Positions 20,605 through 63,514 of a DNA stretch of 64,000 nucleotides are shown one piece after another. Both the position numbers and the translations under genes were made by a program. The notes under the pieces were generated by a model. That model was given only the letters and a program-made list of their open reading frames with translations, did no database searches and was not told where the DNA came from. The first letter of the stretch is position 1; the number at the start of each line of letters is the position of its first letter. The DNA comes from Octopus sinensis (Eukaryota), in the NCBI RefSeq assembly GCF_006345805.1, contig NC_042999.1, forward strand, positions 54,808,001 to 54,872,000. Reading direction: 5' to 3'.

Positions 20605-21400
20605 GATGATATTCTTAAAGTCTTGGGAACAGGTTTGAACTCTGATGTCATATATCTTGACTTCAGTAAAGTCTTCGATAGAGTTGACCATGATATGTTA
20701 CTCTCAGAATTGGCAAATGTTGGAATCCGTGGAAAACTTCTACACTGGATTGAGTATTTCCTGGCGAACAGAACACATGTTGTGGTCGATGGAGTCCACT
20801 CATGCCTAGCAAAAGTCACCAATGGTGTCCCTCAGGGGATTGTCTTGGGCCCGCTCCCTTTATAAACTATATTAACGACCTTTCCAGCATCGTAAAACAC
20901 AGCAAAATGAAAATATTTACTGATGACACTAAGCTTCAGCAAATCATCAATGAAGAAGGCCGAACTCAACTCCAGTCTGATTTACATGCGGTGAGTCAAT
21001 GGGCAGACAAAAACAAAATGCAACTAAACGAGGAAAAATTTGAGCTGATGCATTTTGGAAAAAAGATGATGTTAAAGCCATGCTCTCTTCCTTTAGGGAA
21101 ACCTCTCACAGCATCTAATAATATCAGAAACCTAGGAGTAATTGACGATAACAATCTCAGTTGAAGTGCCCACATCAACAATGAATATGCAAATACACTG
21201 CAACACAATTTCTTTTCCTCAACAGGCTCTGCCCTTGTTAACATTGTCTCAAAATATATCAAAGAGAGAAAGGATCCCATCACTTTTAAACGGAATCTGG
21301 ACAAATTTCTTGAAAGAATACCTGATAAACCATCTATACCTAGATACAACTCACTCAACAAGAACTCCCTACTCGAATGGACCATGATACCACAAAACTT
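20605..21400 (+). pseudogene. CR1/L2-type LINE reverse transcriptase remnant
   Basis: Frameshifted DVIYLDFSKVFDRVDH, GVPQGIVLGP, YINDL, IFTDDTKL and RNLGV motifs, then FKRNLDKFLERIPD near the C-terminus. There appears to be an internal deletion near 21160-21240. Confidence 0.85.
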
Positions 21401-32317: not shown

Positions 32318-32520
32318 TGTTCCAATACATGCCACAGGTCACTCTGAGACCATTTTTCTATAAAATAAGCATATTCCTGAAATCGCTGACTTTCCTATAA
32401 GACCAGAATTGAATTATGTTGACCAACCAAATTGAGATTTACAAAATTAGAAAAAAATAAAGTTGAATTTCTTTTTTCCAATGAAAACCTCCTTACTAAC
32501 CTTTTTTGTTTAATTTTCAG

Positions 32521-32625
32521 GTCAATGCAGCCGTGGAGTCTGTTTCAATGGAGGGGCCTGTAATGGTGGATATATGCCGGCCTGTTCTTGTCCCCCAGGT
32601 TTCCATGGTCCCCGTTGCCAATATG
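32521..32625 (+). CDS. MEGF6: MEGF6-like gene exon: EGF-like domain 1
   Basis: TACTAAC branch point at 32494-32500, acceptor ttttcag|, donor G|gtaaga, 105 bp, phase 1/1. Translates (R)QCSRGVCFNGGACNGGYMPACSCPPGFHGPRCQY. Missed by the ORF track. Confidence 0.92.
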
Positions 32626-32777
32626 GTAAGATCATAAGCTATTTCCTTTTCATTAAAAGTTATCTTTGATTTCCACACTTACTCCCCGAGAGAGTTCTAA
32701 TTTATTTACCGACAGTAAAACTCCGAGTTGTTTTGTTTTTTTAATTCCTTTACACTTTTTCCCTATGAGCCAAGTTT

Positions 32778-40055: not shown

Positions 40056-41308
40056 TATTGGGTTCCCGCCGTTTTTTTTAATCTAAATTTTTTCTATGGT
40101 TTAATAAAATATAACAACTAATTAATAATGTATTCACCCTTGTTGTTTACAACTTATTCCCAACGTTCAACAAGATTTTCAATACCTCGTTGGTAGAAAT
40201 CACCCGATTTTGACTCGAAAAATTGACCCAACCAAGCTCTCAATTCTACATCAGTTCTGAACGAAACTCCGCGCATAGCATTTGAAAGAGATCGAAAGAG
40301 GTGGAAATCCATTGGTGCCAAATCAGGAGAGTACGGCGGGTGTGGCAGCACTTCCCAGCCATGCGTTTGAATAGCTTCCTTGGTCATATTGACAATATGA
40401 GGGCAGGCATTGTCGTGCAGCAGAACTCCATGCTGCCGATTAGGTTTTTCTCTTGAATAGCCATGTTGAGTCGTTCCATCTGTTGAACATAGAGTTCTGC
40501 GTTGGCCGTTTGGTTCCGTTCAAGCAATTCGTAATGTATAATCCCTTTCCGATCCCACCATACACACAACATCGTTTTACGTGGATGAAGATTTTGTTTC
40601 ACGCCCGGTATCGCTTGTTTACCGGGGCTAAGTCATTCCTTATGCTGCTTCATATTGATGTAGAGGCACCATTTTTCGTCGCTAGTAACGATTCGGTAAA
40701 GAAATCGTTGCTTGTGTCCATGAGTTGAACGGTGACGGGCAAGCAAACCAGCGGAGATTGTAGCTCGTTGATTTTTGTTGTTGTCACTTAAAACATTCGG
40801 AACCCATGCGCCATACTTCTGAACTTTACTCATCGAGTGAAGATGCTTCTCTATATCAGTGTGGGAGCATTCCATTTTCTCTGCCAGTTCCCTTGTCGTT
40901 TGACGAGAATTTTCGTGCAAAAGTTGGTTTAATCGATCTTCATCGAACTCAACTGGACGACCAGAACGAGGTGCGTCTTTGAGGTCAAAATTTCCATTTT
41001 TGAACTTGGCATACCAATCACGAGTGGTGCTTTCAGCTATGGCACCCTCTCCATACACAGCACAAATGTCGCGAGCAGCTTTTGCGGTCTTATAAACTTG
41101 ATTAAAAGCAAAAAAGAGGTGTCGAAAATGGTCGTTTTTCTTAACTTGGCATTCCATTTTAATGATCTGAAAATAAACAAAAATTAACTAAAATTAACTA
41201 GAAAAAAAACCCAAAATATATTCCAAAATGATTCAAAAATATAATTCTCGAAACACATAGATTCCAAAATTTAAAAAAAACCGCGGGAACTTAATTGTCA
41301 ACCCAATA
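40056..41308 (-). mobile_element. Near full-length mariner (D,D34D) transposon, frameshifted
   Basis: HTH-PRSGRP, IVTSDEKW, LHDNA and SPDLAPMDFHLF motifs over three frames. The TIR TATTGGGTTGACAATTAAGTTCCCGCGG is intact at 41308, and the copy at 40056 has a 12-bp deletion. TA at both ends. Confidence 0.9.
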
Positions 41309-57285: not shown

Positions 57286-57684
<399 letters not shown>

Positions 57685-58589
57685 TGATAATTTGTTGGTG
57701 ACAATATGCAAAAATGTGATGATCTAGTTTCGTCTTACAAAATTGCTGTCAGAGGCTCAGAAAACAGACAAGAAAAGATCTAAAGAGAAACTCTGTAGAA
57801 CGCCCAATTAACTATTAAGATACTTAGATGGGGCCGTCATTGGACCACTACACCGAGGGTAATTCTGGGTAATTCTTTTTTCTTTTAATTTTTCTTCAAT
57901 CGGTTTACATGAAAAAAATTACAAATATTTTTTTGAAGTGTGAATAAGACCGACAAACAACAGTCGCGATCTCCAAATGTACCTCTTTATTCGCTTTCTC
58001 TTAGAAATTCATGAAATTTAGATTAAAAGGAAAAAATCTACTTTCTTACCGTCAGCTATTTCCGGTTGTATTCAAACAGTTTCCTCCTGAATTTTAAAAG
58101 CTAAGTTTATACCGTCTCTATTATAACTGTTTTCTTGGTTATTTCGAGAGGTTTCTGACGGAGCTGATGGGGACTATGATCTGTGTGGTATGTCGATACA
58201 ATCAACCATTCAATATGAATGATAGTGTGATATTATCAGGCGTCAAAGACTAAGGTTGACTGACTGACTGATTGCAAAAGAAAATGTTCGATATTTTGCT
58301 TTATGACATTGTATACGATGGATGAGGTGAAACCAGCCCATATATCATGCACTCGGGATTTGAAACCGTATCCGCTTGATCATTATGATACCATATAAAA
58401 ACATGAATAAAATTAAATAAAATGGAAACAGATATGTGAGGGTTCGGTCTCGCCTCACGACAATTTGAAGAAATAATGTTTAAGTTTAAAGTTAAATGAC
58501 ACAACAGAACACAAATCAATAGCAAGAGCACTCAGAGACCGCAAACCTCCGCCAACGCAACACCAACGTCCTCTCAAAGATTGGCCAGA

Positions 58590-58893
58590 GATAAATTTTA
58601 GAATGAGAATATCTGAAATAAACTCGATTGCTCTCACAAACAAGAATACTAAAAATGAACCCGACTGCTCTCAAAAATTGAATAAAAAAAAAAACAGGAA
58701 AAATAATCCAGAATCCTTGTCCGGTATCGGATCGATCCCAAAATCTAATCAGTTCGTGCCAGTCACGAGGCCAAACATCCCTGAAAGTTTCATCTGAATT
58801 CATTCAGCGGTTCTTGAGATATCTTGTCCACGGACAAACAAACAAATACGACTGAAAACAATACCTCCGCCTTCGCTAAGGCGGAGGAAATAA
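58590..58893 (+). mobile_element. Helentron-like non-autonomous element, 3' part
   Basis: ACAAACAAACAAA tract followed by the terminal hairpin CCTCCGCC-TTCGCTAA-GGCGGAGG. Confidence 0.45.
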
Positions 58894-58962
58894 TAGACTG
58901 AAAGCTTCTATCAGAATGGTGTTTAATGTTGCCGTCTTCGGAAATATGAACACTCGTCAATT

Positions 58963-59362
58963 ATAGGCGCAGGAGTGGCTGTGTGGTAAGCAGCTTGCTA
59001 ACCAACCACATGGTTCCGGGTTCAGTCCCACTGCGTAGCATCTTGGGAAAGTGTCTTCTGCTATAGCCCCGGGCCGACCAATGCCTTGTGAGTGGATTTG
59101 GTAGACGGAAACTGAAAGAAGCCTGTCGTATATATGTATATATATATATATATATGTGTGTGTGTATGTGTGGGTGTTTGTGTGTCTGTGTTTGTCCCCC
59201 AATGCTGGTGTGTTTACGTCCCCGTAACTTAGCGGTTCGGCAAAAGAGACCGATAGAATAAGTATTGGGCTTACAAAAAGAACAAGTCCCGGGGTCGAGT
59301 TGCTCGACTAAAGGCGGTGCTCCAGCATGACCGCAGTCAAATGACTGAAACAAGTAAAAAGA
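58963..59362 (+). mobile_element. SINE family C, full length
   Basis: Complete head, internal (TA)n(TG)n and complete tail GCAGTCAAATGACTGAAACAAGTAAAAAGAG. Confidence 0.85.
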
Positions 59363-59836
59363 GTATACAGTCAACCCGCTGATTATAGTAGTGAACCTCG
59401 TTATTGTCTTAATGTTTACTGATCTAAGCTAATTAGTTGGTTACAACTAATTATTTTTGACGCAGCCGAACACTAGAGATCGAACTTTTGACTCTTCTGT
59501 TGAGAAAATTCATTTACCGTACGACTGGATGTGTTTCGAAACTGGTTTCATTGTCTCAGAATAACAATATAAATTGGAAACAAAATTAGTGACTCTTGTC
59601 GGTGTAAGTTAAGCCCTTTATTAGCTGTGACATGTCACATGTTACAACTCAGGGATTGAAATTTGTGTTGTCTGTCTGGAACCACATTGCACAAAGTAAA
59701 ACTTCCGGAAAATTGAGATTACAACCAATTTTTGGTTCCTGATTGTACCTCGTCCAATTATCTTACATCACTTAACGCGTTCGGAGAGGTATGAACTTCA
59801 TCACATCATCCTCAAGCCACTATCTTTCAGATGCGA

Positions 59837-59857
59837 GGTTAGGGTTAGGGTTAGGGT
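59837..59857 (+). repeat. Interstitial telomeric repeat GG(TTAGGG)3T
   Basis: Three exact TTAGGG units at 59839-59856, abutting the 18S fragment. Confidence 0.85.
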
Positions 59858-60056
59858 CCATGCTTTTCGTATGCAAGCCGGCAGGGCTCGCTCTGAGCAC
59901 TCTAATTTTTTCACAGTGAACGTACTGGCCGCCTCGGACACTCGGCGAAGAGCACCCTCGGAGGAACCGTGCGGGCCGAAACGACCGGGAGGTGGACGCA
60001 CTACTACCGCAACGCGAACGGCGACGCCCGACGACGCGCCTGCCTCGTGGCTCCCG
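59857..60056 (-). pseudogene. 18S rRNA gene fragment (V4 region)
   Basis: GC-rich island. The minus strand reads ..GGTGCTCTTCGCCGAGTGTCC..ACGTTCACTGTGAAAAAATTAGAGTGCTCAGAGC..GCATGGA, matching the conserved 18S segment GTTTACTTTGAAAAAATTAGAGTG(T/C)TCAAAGC..GCATGGAATAAT as recalled. Confidence 0.85.
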
Positions 60057-60704
60057 TAGAAAATTGAAGAGAACAGGTGGTGAATAGTTTAGTTATGTAA
60101 CGTTTTGCTTCCTTCGTGGTTGCTGCTCTATACACGGGGCTGTATTACGTGGGTGTAAATTTATTTCAGGATGTCGTAACGGTGAATGACACACTATTTC
60201 GGGATCCCTGTCGTAAAGTAAATGCCTACAGCTCTTTACAAACTCTGGCTGTTTTTTTTTTATTTCGAGAGACAGTAACACACTGTTGCTATTGTGTTGT
60301 GAAAAATACTCGTAGTTGCGTCCGATAACCTTCAACCTCATTGAAACAAAACTTCATACCGACTCCCAGAAATGGATACCAGAAGTAGCAGCAGCAGCAG
60401 TCAACGTTGTCTCTTAAATGTAAATTAGTTTCTTTCAGCTCTGCACAAGGGTCCTGTACTTTTACGGAGACAATTATTCGACATTTTTGGGGGCAGCTAC
60501 GCCAAATAATCTCAACATAATAAAATGGGTTGATTTTTAAATGAAAGTCTATGTGGATGGTCACTATTTCAATGTGGTATTTTGAATAGACGCATGAACT
60601 TATAAAGGAAACCAGTCAAGATAATGAGGGAAAAAATTTATTGATTGGGTAACTCATTTGGGAGGAGCCAATCAACATGTCTCAATCCTCAGAGAAGCGT
60701 TGTC

Positions 60705-60738
<34 letters not shown>

Positions 60739-60954
60739 TTCTAATTTTGGCACCAGGCCAGCAATTTTGGAGAGGGGAGTAAGTTGATTAAATTGACCCC
60801 TGTACGCAACAGGTACTTAATGTATCGATCCCGAAAGGATGAAAGGCAAAGTCAATCTCGACGGAATTTGGACTCAGAACGAAAAGACGAACGAAATATC
60901 GCTAAGTATTTTGCCCGGCGGTCTAACGATTCTGCCAGCTCGCTGCCTTAATGT

Positions 60955-61057
<103 letters not shown>

Positions 61058-61169
61058 TCATCTGAAGATCGATCATTCAAAACTTTAGTAGAATACCATA
61101 TTTACTGATTTTTATAATAAAAGGGTTAAGAGTGACTTCGAGGTCACTGTCAACCTTTACCTTATAAAA

Positions 61170-61209
<40 letters not shown>

Positions 61210-61730
61210 TATATACACTGGTGTCTGTGCAAGTGGGTCCATCTGTGTATCATGGACACCGTTAGAAGGCATGATGCTGAGGAACTGTCTGAGATAAAAT
61301 CTCTTCATAGACATGCTGAGTTAAAAACAGAGAATATATCGGAGCAAAATTACCATTATCGCTCCAGTGACTCACGAGAACGACAAGTGTGTTTCGCCGT
61401 TGTTGGGGCTTGTCAGTGCCATGCACTTGATTGCCAATTGCTTTAACGAAACTGCTGCCTCTATAAATAGTTGCTCTTTAAAAGGAGTAAGAGTACTTAA
61501 CTCTGAGTTTCTCACTATTCCAGCTTCGGGGATTCGCTTAATCAGGCGGATTATGAAATTCTCCGTTAAGGCCCGATTTATAGATGGGTTCTTCACTCGG
61601 AAATCTATGTAGCAACATTACTGCCACACCCACATGTTAAACAAGATTGCTGACTTAGATTGTCAGAACATATAAAATTAAATATAGTCACAATGTTGGT
61701 GGTAATAGAGTAAAATATTTATGGAAAGTT

Positions 61731-62036
61731 GTGTCTAAGTGTGTCGCGACTCAAGTTTCATGGTTTCGCTTAATGAAACTAATTACGATATGTTTGGGGT
61801 CCCCTTATTTATACTCGAGTTTTTCCCACCCTTTGAAAGGCTGGCCACCGAAAATGCCACGCCCACTTGAAAAACAACTCAGTTAAATGTAAATATACAT
61901 CAAATATGGGGATGTTTTAGAAAGAGACGGCATGAACAAAAATAAAAGTAAAAAGTATCCAAAATCTATAAAATATCTACTGGGATTTCTTAAGCAGCGG
62001 AAACACGAAACTTGAGTAGCGACTCACTCTGACACT
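61731..62036. mobile_element. MITE with imperfect TIRs of about 45 bp
   Basis: GTGTCTAAGTGTGTCGCGACTCAAGTTTCATGGTTTCGCT is inverted relative to AGCGGAAACACGAAACTTGAGTAGCGACTCACTCTGACAC. Confidence 0.55.
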
Positions 62037-63391
62037 GCTTTGAATAAATCTTGCACGCGTGCGTGTGTGTGCGTGCGTGTGTGCGTGTGTGTGTGTGTGG
62101 TGTGTGTGTGTGTCGGACAAATGTGAAAGACAGTTCGGATGTTATGTACGTTTTACACTTAGAATAAGCAGCTAGTTCTCATTTAGAGTACGCCGTACCG
62201 TTTTAAAAAGAGTACGCTTGATTATATATATAGTGAGAATTTACAAAAAAAAAAGAAACAAAAGACGAAGACGGGTGTGTAAACAACAAACAGATGTATT
62301 AGTTTCATGCTCGGGACGTGAGAAAGTCTTTTACGTTTCAAGCCTACGCTCTTCGACGGAAATGAACACATAAATAAACAGGGAGAGAAAATAAAAAGGT
62401 TTGGTGACTAGCGATCTATCATGGCGAATGCCGGACAGAGGGGTCACACAGGAGAACTAGGAAGAAGGGGAGATGATAAAGTAGTGGTGATCCCAAAACG
62501 AAGGTGCACGTGCATGTGTATGTAAGAGCGTGTATCTGCGTGCGGATGGTAGCTGGTGACCTTGACGTGTGCGTATGTGCATGTGTAGGTGTGTGTATGA
62601 TGTTGTGGGTGCTGGGAAGTGGTCAGTGCTAGTGTGTGCGGGGCGGTGTGGTGTGTAGTGTGGTGGTTTGGCAAGATGTGGTGTGGTTGTGGTGCTGGAG
62701 TGTTGGTTGGGATGAGGGTAGGGATGGGGTATGTGGGTGTGGGTGTAATGGATGAGGTGGGGTGGAATGGTAGGTTGGAATGTGTAGGGGTGAGGTAACG
62801 AGGAAGGGTTGACGATGAAGATGGGTAGGAGGGAAGAGCGGAAGTAGGTGTCTAAACAAGAGAGGAGAGGTGGGTGGGATGAAGTAGGTGTGAGAGGAGG
62901 AGGGTTAGATGAAGAGGTGAGGGTGTTGAGCTCATGTGGCGCAAAGGAGCGAAGAGAGAAAGATAATCCCTGTTCACGGTGAAGACGGGAGTCCGGATGG
63001 CCCCTGTGCAAGGACAATCCGTCACTCGCAAGTGAATGTGACCTAGAATCTTGTAGCAGAGTTTTGCTATATTTTATGTGAAGGCGCGTGACTTAATATC
63101 TAGGGTCTTGAAGTCACGATCACAAGGCCGTGGGTTTCGATTCCTGGACGATTCAGTGCATTGTATCCTTGAGCAAGGTATTTCATTTCACATTGCCCCA
63201 GTCTACCCAGCTATAAATGCGCACCAGCCAGGTGCCGCAGGGCCAAGCAGGTGGTCTGATTGCGACAAGCACCTAAAACAACAAATCAGATAGAGAGAGG
63301 AGAGGGTGTGAAACGCAGACCAAGGGTCAAAGATAAATAAGATCGTTTTGAAAAAAGATCGATGCTAAATTTTTATTCATTTATTGAACAG

Positions 63392-63514
63392 ATATCGACG
63401 AATGTGGAATAAATAATGGTGGTTGCCAATACGAGTGCGTGAACACCCAGGGTGGATCTATTTGTCGATGTCCAGACGGTCAAACACTTAGTGATGACGA
63501 AAAAACATGTATTG
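63392..63514 (+). CDS. MEGF6: MEGF6-like gene exon: calcium-binding EGF domain
   Basis: Acceptor tttattgaacag|, donor G|gtaagt, 123 bp, phase 1/1. Translates DIDECGINNGGCQYECVNTQGGSICRCPDGQTLSDDEKTCI. Missed by the ORF track. Confidence 0.92.

What the first reader, a model, noticed from the sequence alone, without database searches (positions are those of the whole stretch)
59837..60056. Antisense 18S rRNA V4 fragment fused directly to (TTAGGG)3 inside an intron
Seen: on the + strand, unique DNA runs into GG(TTAGGG)3 and then, sharing a single T, into about 200 bp of GC-rich sequence that is the reverse complement of 18S V4. The fragment stops at GCATGGA, just where 18S would continue ATAAT. 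I see no TSD or polyA. Established: short interstitial telomeric arrays can arise at repaired double-strand breaks, and in mammals some adjoin reverse-transcribed telomerase-RNA pieces. Inference: the polarity (G-strand repeats followed by antisense RNA copy) is what an RT would make if it added telomeric repeats to a broken 3' end and then switched template onto 18S rRNA. That would be telomerase- or PLE-RT-mediated, rRNA-templated break repair. An alternative is capture of a telomere-healed rDNA fragment.
Basis: partly seen in the sequence, partly recalled or inferred. Interest (0 to 1): 0.78.

Follow-up and report, generated by a model that had tools for sequence, protein, structure and literature searches.

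The report
Telomere repeats fused to rRNA copy
An intron of an octopus EGF-repeat gene holds a 220-bp patch of three telomere repeats joined directly to a backwards copy of part of 18S ribosomal RNA; it is most likely a scar of chromosome-break repair involving reverse transcription, interesting but so far a single case.

Summary
GG(TTAGGG)3 lies at 59837-59856. It runs, through one shared T, into 200 bp (59857-60056) that are the reverse complement of 18S rRNA V4. That piece is 93% identical over 206 columns to a native octopod 18S, and Rfam places its conserved part at SSU positions 737-813. It is the only telomeric array and the only rDNA piece in the 64 kb. Its flanks are unique in the window, with no target-site duplication and no poly(A). 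It sits in a 5.8-kb intron between two calcium-binding EGF exons.

Polarity shows that the telomeric tract caps the left flank, with the 18S piece beyond it. It fits cDNA synthesis primed from a telomeric 3' end, but random capture of two fragments would give this layout 1 time in 4.

A second, independent 92-nt antisense 18S V4 insert in Octopus sinensis has no telomeric repeats. Its rRNA-sense 3' end lies only 4 nt from this one and its 5' end differs, which hints at an RNA-derived origin.

I could not obtain the empty site, the copy number in the host genome or read support.

Verdict: a real compound break-repair insertion and a new variant of known interstitial telomeric and templated insertions. 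The reverse-transcriptase template-switch mechanism is plausible but unproven.

The parts
59837..59838 (+). [quoted passage not shown] It is either the last bases of the broken left end (microhomology for telomerase) or the first added bases.
   Evidence: Sequence. The ancestral state is unknown because no empty site could be obtained.
59839..59856 (+). Perfect (TTAGGG)3, a short interstitial telomeric sequence with the G-strand on the + strand.
   Evidence: TTAGGG is the cephalopod telomere motif (PMC6160780 and PMC13218726, both citing Adachi 2014).
59857..59857 (+). Junction T shared between the next telomeric hexamer and the 18S copy (1-nt overlap).
   Evidence: Native antisense 18S reads ...CATCATT|CCATGC; the window reads ...TTAGGGT|CCATGC.
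59857..60056 (-). 200-nt copy of 18S rRNA V4 with the sense strand on the - strand. It corresponds to about nt 1159-1364 of a 2,645-nt octopod 18S (L001 2784-2989), so it reads as antisense on the + strand, directly after the telomeric repeats.
   Evidence: blastn 93% identity over 206 columns, E=3e-84. Rfam RF01960 positions 737-813, E=2.4e-4. All 3 differences in the first 154 ungapped nt are CpG transitions.
57626..63391 (+). Host intron that contains the insertion.
   Evidence: GT donor at 57626-57627 and AG acceptor at 63390-63391, between two phase-1 calcium-binding EGF exons.
57503..57625 (+). Upstream calcium-binding EGF exon of the host gene (MEGF6/EGFL6-like).
   Evidence: Pfam EGF_CA and FXa_inhibition. 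67% identity to Lottia LOTGIDRAFT_158536.
63392..63514 (+). Downstream calcium-binding EGF exon of the host gene.

Best explanation
This is a one-off compound filler insertion made while a germ-line chromosome break in this intron was repaired.

Step 1 (inferred): the 3' end of the left break end (...GATGCGAGG) was extended by telomerase with about three TTAGGG repeats, as in known short interstitial telomeric sequences.

Step 2 (inferred): a reverse transcriptase used that telomeric 3' end as primer. It could have been telomerase itself after leaving its own template, or a LINE or Penelope-like retroelement enzyme acting without its endonuclease. It jumped, with 1 nt of overlap, onto the 3' end of an 18S rRNA fragment ending at ...GCAUGGA and copied about 200 nt towards the rRNA 5' end.

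Step 3 (inferred): the cDNA end was joined to the right break end by non-homologous end joining and the second strand was filled in.

What is shown directly: the two parts abut with a 1-nt overlap. They have the polarity this order of events requires. There are no target-site duplication, poly(A) or retroelement sequences. The insert is not continuous with rDNA on either side.
For: - Structure and identity of the two parts.
- They are the only telomeric array and the only rDNA fragment in 64 kb and they touch, so they are not independent events.
- Flanks 59400-60700 are unique within the window.
- No target-site duplication and no poly(A), which rules out standard LINE target-primed retroposition.
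- Polarity: the G-strand repeats sit 5' of the antisense rRNA copy on one strand. This is the only geometry in which mature 18S rRNA can have been copied in place.
- 18S homology stops at both ends, and native 18S continues differently at both.
- A second, independent 92-nt antisense 18S V4 insert in O. sinensis (L003 10652-10743, equal to L001 2902-2993, 100% identity) has an rRNA-sense 3' end 4 nt from this one but a 5' end 118 nt away. A common 3' end with variable 5' truncation is the usual signature of reverse-transcribed copies.
- GG in register with the repeats at the left flank, as at about 75% of mammalian interstitial telomeric sites (PMC2246262).
- Precedents: telomeric repeats and cDNA patches at induced breaks (PMC5110952); horse interstitial telomeric sequences co-inserted with extra sequence at 18% of loci (PMC7215372).
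Against: - This is a single locus. No empty site is available, so a break-repair origin and the ancestral GG are assumed.
- Random ligation of two fragments gives this arrangement about 1 time in 4.
- The O. sinensis rRNA insert has no telomeric repeats, so telomerase is not needed for rRNA insertion.
- That second case was found by a search seeded with this fragment, so only overlapping inserts could be found. The coincidence of ends (about a 3-5% chance) is modest evidence.
- None of the papers I read reports telomerase switching to a foreign RNA. Rodent TERC-ITS loci have a different, two-ended architecture (PMC2246262).
- The host's own 18S was not available. The hypervariable end of the fragment differs from L001 by two 3-bp indels and a cluster of substitutions.
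Confidence: 0.4

Rival explanations
1. The break-repair setting is the same, but the 18S piece was a free double-stranded DNA fragment. It could have been broken or extrachromosomal rDNA, or a cDNA made elsewhere. It was ligated by end joining between a telomerase-extended (or telomeric-fragment-bearing) left end and the right end. Its orientation is then a coincidence and no template switch occurred.
For: No target-site duplication or poly(A), and only 1 nt of overlap at the internal junction, which end joining also produces. Capture of unrelated DNA or cDNA at breaks, and 'random sequence' next to interstitial telomeric sequences, are documented (PMC5110952, PMC7215372). The observed arrangement has a prior of about 25% under random capture.
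Against: Both known inserts come from the same approximately 200-nt stretch of mature 18S, with 3' ends 4 nt apart. Random breakage of a whole rDNA unit would not favour this. No spacer sequence is included.
Confidence: 0.3
2. The 220 bp is a copy of a pre-existing junction. It would be a member of a low-copy repeat or transposable element that carries an 18S-derived segment and a telomere-like tail, or a segmental copy from a region where telomeric repeats abut rDNA debris.
For: The host genome could not be searched, so copy number is unknown. The window is packed with SINEs and microsatellites. Another 18S V4 piece exists elsewhere in an octopus genome.
Against: The insert and 400-700 bp of flank on each side are single-copy in the 64 kb, whereas the real SINE families recur 8 or more times. 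No other element in the window has a TTAGGG tail. The other 18S insert has different ends, different flanks and no telomeric repeat. Searches of protein indexes with six-frame translations found no other junction-bearing ORF, although these indexes seem to lack this host's genome.
Confidence: 0.12
3. Retroelement target-primed reverse transcription at a nick, not a break. A LINE or Penelope-like enzyme began on an RNA with a (CCCUAA)n 3' end (C-strand telomeric transcript, telomerase RNA template region, or an element tail) and then jumped to 18S rRNA. This would resemble mammalian L1/ncRNA chimeras.
For: The polarity is the same as in the best explanation. rRNA/L1 chimeras formed by template switching are known in mammals (PMC13174262). 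Retroelement debris is present in the window (reverse-transcriptase fragment at 20802-21164).
Against: No target-site duplication, no element-derived sequence and no tail other than the telomeric hexamers. No element with such a tail is seen in the window.
Confidence: 0.08
4. Assembly or read chimera: rDNA and telomeric sequence were wrongly stitched into the intron.
For: No raw reads could be inspected.
Against: The insert is short and bounded on both sides by contiguous unique intronic sequence. It differs from the reference 18S by CpG transitions and indels rather than being a clean rDNA copy. A comparable insert is present in an independent NCBI assembly of O. sinensis and is even annotated as coding.
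Confidence: 0.05

Closest known systems
Short interstitial telomeric sequences inserted at double-strand breaks by telomerase (Nergadze et al. 2004, 2007; PMC2246262, PMC7215372)
   Same: A few exact TTAGGG hexamers at an internal, unique site, with G residues in register at the upstream flank. In horse, 18% of such insertions carry extra non-telomeric sequence.
   Different: Here the extra sequence can be identified as an antisense copy of 18S rRNA. The host is a cephalopod, not a vertebrate. The empty site was not available to prove insertion.
TERC-ITS loci (telomeric repeats flanked by retrotranscribed telomerase RNA; PMC2246262, PMC8537989)
   Same: Telomeric repeats adjoin a copy of a cellular non-coding RNA at a presumed break-repair site, implying reverse transcription beyond the telomerase template.
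   Different: The RNA is 18S rRNA, not telomerase RNA. In rodent TERC-ITS the RNA 3' domain is in the opposite orientation to the repeats, which is explained by a two-ended model. Here both parts read as one continuous cDNA strand.
Class 2 templated sequence insertions (cDNA patches at breaks; Onozawa et al. 2014, reviewed in PMC5110952)
   Same: No target-site duplication, no poly(A), the donor is a transcribed sequence, and the junction looks like end joining. TTAGGG patches were also seen at induced breaks.
   Different: This is a compound of a telomeric part and an rRNA part in one insert. The review does not mention rRNA donors (no occurrence of rRNA or ribosomal in its text).
Telomere-primed reverse transcription by retroelements: endonuclease-independent L1 at dysfunctional telomeres (Morrish 2007, cited in PMC5110952) and endonuclease-deficient Penelope-like elements such as Athena and Coprina (my own knowledge, not read here)
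   Same: The G-strand telomeric 3' end serves as primer, giving (TTAGGG)n followed by an antisense copy of the RNA.
   Different: No retroelement sequence is present, the location is internal rather than terminal, and the template is rRNA.
L1/ncRNA chimeric retrocopies, including 28S rRNA/L1 (PMC13174262)
   Same: Fragments of rRNA with recurrent end points are incorporated by template switching.
   Different: Those have an L1 part, a target-site duplication and poly(A). None of these is present here.

Membership tests
Short interstitial telomeric sequence (break-repair type) | Head-to-tail exact telomeric hexamers of the host at a non-terminal site | tested here: met
   (TTAGGG)3 at 59839-59856. 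The site lies inside an intron between two exons.
Short interstitial telomeric sequence (break-repair type) | Orthologous or allelic empty site showing a clean insertion with or without a small deletion | not testable with these tools
   No host or sister-species genomic DNA for this locus could be retrieved.
Short interstitial telomeric sequence (break-repair type) | [quoted passage not shown] | tested here: inconclusive
   GG at 59837-59838 is in register, but the ancestral sequence is unknown.
TERC-ITS | Adjacent sequence derived from telomerase RNA | tested here: not met
   The adjacent 200 bp is 18S rRNA.
LINE-mediated (target-primed) retrocopy or chimeric retrocopy | Target-site duplication flanking the insert | tested here: not met
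   No direct repeat brackets 59837-60056.
LINE-mediated (target-primed) retrocopy or chimeric retrocopy | Poly(A) or element-specific 3' tail, or a LINE-derived segment | tested here: not met
   Neither is present. The only tail-like part is the telomeric hexamers.
Class 2 templated sequence insertion (cDNA patch at a break) | Insert copied from a transcribed distant locus, with no target-site duplication or poly(A) | tested here: met
   The donor is mature 18S rRNA sequence only. There is no target-site duplication or poly(A).
Class 2 templated sequence insertion (cDNA patch at a break) | End-joining signatures relative to the empty site (microdeletion, microhomology) | not testable with these tools
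   Only the internal junction could be assessed (1-nt overlap).
Native rDNA or telomere-healed rDNA end | 18S continuous with the rest of the rDNA unit, and telomeric G-strand 3' of the rDNA strand it caps | tested here: not met
   Homology to rDNA ends at both borders. The polarity is the reverse: the tract caps the left unique flank.
Telomere-primed retroelement insertion (endonuclease-deficient Penelope-like element or endonuclease-independent L1) | G-strand repeats followed by an antisense copy of the template RNA | tested here: met
Telomere-primed retroelement insertion (endonuclease-deficient Penelope-like element or endonuclease-independent L1) | The copied RNA is the retroelement itself | tested here: not met
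   The copied sequence is 18S rRNA. There is no reverse-transcriptase ORF or other element sequence within 59400-60700.
rRNA-derived SINE or other multicopy repeat | Many dispersed copies sharing the same ends | tested here: inconclusive
   Single-copy in the 64 kb, where true SINE families recur. The host genome was not searchable.

The most novel reading that the evidence does not exclude
In the cephalopod germ line, a telomerase-extended break end can prime reverse transcription of an abundant cellular RNA. Here that RNA would be a defined 18S rRNA fragment whose 3' end lies at ...GCAUGGA(AUGA). This would be telomere-primed, rRNA-templated break repair by telomerase or a telomerase-like (Penelope-type) reverse transcriptase. 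It would link telomerase healing mechanistically to endonuclease-independent retrotransposition, and the near-identical 3' end in a second octopus insertion would mark a preferred rRNA fragment as template.
Probability: 0.25. Interest if true: 0.75.

Novelty: new variant of a known kind. Interest (0 to 1): 0.45.

Why it matters
If the two parts were made as one cDNA, the locus is a natural record of a reverse transcriptase moving from telomeric-repeat synthesis onto a foreign cellular RNA at an internal chromosome break. That would be an intermediate between telomerase 'healing', telomere-attached Penelope-like elements and endonuclease-independent LINE insertion, which are usually linked only by phylogeny.

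It would also extend break-repair interstitial telomeric sequences, documented in vertebrates, to molluscs. It gives a concrete census to run in the now numerous chromosome-scale cephalopod assemblies. If it is only a random two-fragment capture, it is an ordinary repair scar.

Tried and rejected
- Rfam at gathering threshold on the whole window, and at E<=1 on 59600-60300, found nothing. The 18S hit appears only when the fragment alone is given, so that truncated alignment is allowed. A weak mir-971 hit (E=0.33) is noise.
- I obtained a native 18S indirectly. I searched a concatenation of the fragment's six-frame translations, which found a spurious ORF on rDNA contigs (P0001, giving L001 and L002) and an O. 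sinensis 'protein' whose C-terminus is translated antisense 18S (P0002, giving L003).
- Exact-product look-ups of four window ORFs all returned nothing. These were the junction-spanning ORF 59801-60001, the 18S-internal ORF 59871-60059, the adjacent ORF 60093-60341 and the mariner-like ORF. So there is no independent assembly of this locus and no empty site.
- Searching the three EGF exons found no cephalopod protein; the best hit was Lottia at 67%. The orthologous intron could therefore not be fetched.
- An exact scan of metagenome contigs for GCTTGCATACGAAAAGCATGG gave 0 hits.
- A full HMMER scan of 1.84 billion representatives with the junction ORF returned only six generic 18S-derived ORFs matching the conserved core, with no junction.
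- I considered and rejected these readings:
  - Telomere-healed rDNA fragment: wrong polarity.
  - Standard LINE retrocopy: no target-site duplication or poly(A).
  - TERC-ITS: the RNA is 18S.
  - Native rDNA: the homology ends at both borders.
- I also considered that an 18S-specific R2-like element (such as R8 of Hydra) might generate rRNA fragments ending at this site. The paper I read gives no insertion coordinates, and L001 and L002 are uninterrupted, so this remains an untested idea.

Full report
**What is there**

Reading 59400-60500 shows unique AT-rich sequence ending ...CAGATGCGAGG. It is followed by TTAGGGTTAGGGTTAGGG (59839-59856), a T (59857), and then GC-rich sequence to 60056. 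After that, AT-rich unique sequence resumes (TAGAAAATTGAAG...).

The telomeric 12-mer (up to 1 mismatch) occurs nowhere else in the 64 kb. The expected number is 0.11, and 0 of 100 shuffles reached the observed count. No other 18-mer with up to 3 mismatches exists on either strand. TTAGGG is the only experimentally determined cephalopod telomere motif (PMC6160780 and PMC13218726, both citing Adachi 2014).

**Identity of the GC-rich part**

Rfam found nothing at gathering threshold or in a 700-bp E-value scan. When the fragment alone was given, SSU_rRNA_eukarya matched 59857-59934 on the minus strand, at model positions 737-813, E=2.4e-4. The match is cut at the 3' side exactly after GCAUGGA.

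To obtain a native reference I translated the fragment in six frames and searched the concatenation. This recovered a spurious ORF on rDNA contigs (P0001). Its contig L001 carries a complete 2,645-nt 18S (L001 1626-4270, 1339 bits). The window fragment 59857-60056 aligns to L001 2989-2784 in reverse complement with 191/206 identities, E=3e-84.

In the first 154 ungapped positions there are three differences, all CpG transitions. The hypervariable end differs by two 3-bp indels and a cluster of substitutions that includes extra CpGs in the window copy. The source rRNA was therefore a different 18S variant or species from L001, not simply a decayed copy of it. The fragment keeps CpG observed/expected of 1.32, against 0.81 in its flanks.

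Native 18S continues GCATGGA|ATGATGG at one end and ...CGCGCG|CGGGAGCC at the other (sense strand). Homology therefore stops cleanly at both borders, and exactly one T is shared with the telomeric tract. The whole window contains no other rDNA-like segment.

**Context**

The window shares a SINE family at 92% identity with Octopus sinensis (L003). It is full of (TA)n and (CA)n microsatellites and SINE copies, so the host is an octopod.

Two phase-1 calcium-binding EGF exons lie at 57503-57625 and 63392-63514, with AG/GT splice sites. They match Pfam EGF_CA and FXa_inhibition, and their best protein relative is Lottia LOTGIDRAFT_158536, with MEGF6/EGFL6-like hits. The insert lies in the 5.8-kb intron between them.

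The 1.3 kb around the insert (59400-60700) is single-copy in the window, bracketed by SINE copies at 58962-59365 and 60738-60954. No direct repeat brackets the insert and there is no poly(A).

**What the polarity says**

On the + strand the order is: left flank, (TTAGGG)3, antisense 18S, right flank. A telomeric G-strand always runs 5' to 3' away from the DNA it caps. The tract therefore belongs to the left flank, and the 18S piece lies beyond its distal end.

A broken rDNA end healed by telomerase would instead read 18S-(TTAGGG)n on one strand.

If mature 18S rRNA was copied in place, the cDNA (antisense) must have been extended from the telomeric 3' end towards the right. Priming from the right-hand break end would have produced sense 18S on the bottom strand's extension, which is not what is seen. 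Under random ligation of a telomeric piece and an rDNA or cDNA piece, the observed arrangement is one of four equally likely classes. Polarity alone is therefore only weak (1 in 4) evidence for a continuous cDNA.

**An independent second case**

The same search hit O. sinensis LOC115210491 (P0002), a DUF7041 gag-like protein of a retrotransposon copy. Its last 31 residues are translated antisense 18S.

In its locus (L003, CM016862.1 at about 73.8 Mb) a 92-nt piece (L003 10652-10743) is 100% identical to L001 2993-2902. It interrupts the gag reading frame just before the zinc-knuckle motif. It has no telomeric repeat, and its flanks are unrelated to the window's.

Its rRNA-sense 3' end (2993) is 4 nt from the window's (2989), and its 5' end (2902) is 118 nt from the window's (2784). 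A shared 3' end with variable 5' truncation is what reverse transcription from a defined RNA 3' end produces. It suggests an 18S fragment ending near GCAUGGA(AUGA) as a preferred template.

Two caveats apply. The case was found by a search seeded with this fragment. Two cases give a coincidence probability of only a few percent. It also shows that rRNA insertion does not require telomeric repeats.

**Comparison with what is known**

- Short interstitial telomeric sequences in mammals were inserted at double-strand breaks. About 75% have nucleotides in register at the break (PMC2246262). Here GG is in register, but the ancestral state is unknown.
- In horse, 18% of such insertions carry extra 'random' sequence and one carries telomerase RNA sequence (PMC7215372).
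- Rodent TERC-ITS loci join the repeats to the 3' domain of telomerase RNA in the opposite orientation, explained by a two-ended model (PMC2246262). That architecture differs from this one.
- Class 2 templated insertions are RNA-derived patches without target-site duplication or poly(A). TTAGGG patches were seen at induced breaks (PMC5110952).
- 28S rRNA/L1 chimeras with recurrent rRNA end points occur in mammals (PMC13174262), but they have an L1 part, a target-site duplication and poly(A).
- My searches of the held library found no report of an interstitial telomeric tract fused to an rRNA copy.

**Conclusion**

The most likely reading (about 0.4) is a single break-repair event. In it, a telomerase-extended 3' end primed reverse transcription of an 18S rRNA fragment, followed by end joining.

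The rivals, with my confidence in each:
- Capture of a free rDNA or cDNA fragment, with coincidental orientation: about 0.3.
- A copy of a pre-existing or multicopy junction: about 0.12.
- Nick-primed retroelement synthesis starting on a CCCUAA-ended RNA: about 0.08.
- Assembly artefact: about 0.05.

The enzyme cannot be named from this locus. The decisive tests need the host and sister genomes, which these tools could not reach. They are the empty site, copy number, read support, and a genome-wide census of polarity and of rRNA-fragment end points.

Noticed in passing
L003 10652-10743 (O. sinensis CM016862.1, about 73.8 Mb): A 92-nt antisense 18S V4 piece, 100% identical to native 18S, is inserted in the gag-like (DUF7041) ORF of a retrotransposon copy. 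NCBI's model LOC115210491 translates it, so the last 31 residues of that 'protein' are antisense rRNA. Its rRNA 3' end lies 4 nt from the window insert's, and it has no telomeric repeat.
   Followed up: partly
L001 1626-4270 (Logan SRR9105617): The native octopod 18S is 2,645 nt, about 800 nt longer than the 1,831-position Rfam model, with GC-rich expansion segments. Gene callers place spurious ORFs of 200 or more aa on it (P0001).
   Followed up: partly
window 59857-60056 versus L001 2784-2830: The hypervariable end of the inserted copy differs from the reference 18S by two 3-bp indels and a substitution cluster that adds CpGs. The insert may preserve a different or older V4 variant of the host rDNA.
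   Followed up: no
window 32514-32666, 57503-57625, 63392-63514 (+): EGF and calcium-binding EGF exons of a MEGF6/EGFL6-like gene (67% identity to Lottia LOTGIDRAFT_158536). No cephalopod protein for it was found in the 5.8-billion-protein index, so the gene may be unannotated in octopus genomes.
   Followed up: partly
window 58962-59365 and 60738-60954, plus 8 or more further copies each across the window: Two abundant SINE-like repeat families (70-86% identity between copies). One has an internal (TA/CA)n tract and the other is followed by a (TA)n array at 60955-61051. ARAGORN finds no intact tRNA-like head.
   Followed up: no
window 40633-41157 (-): A 174-aa ORF resembling the N-terminal half of a mariner-type transposase (judged from its sequence, not checked against any library).
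   Followed up: no
window 20802-21164 (+): A 120-aa ORF that looks like a fragment of a non-LTR reverse transcriptase (judged from its sequence, not checked against any library).
   Followed up: no
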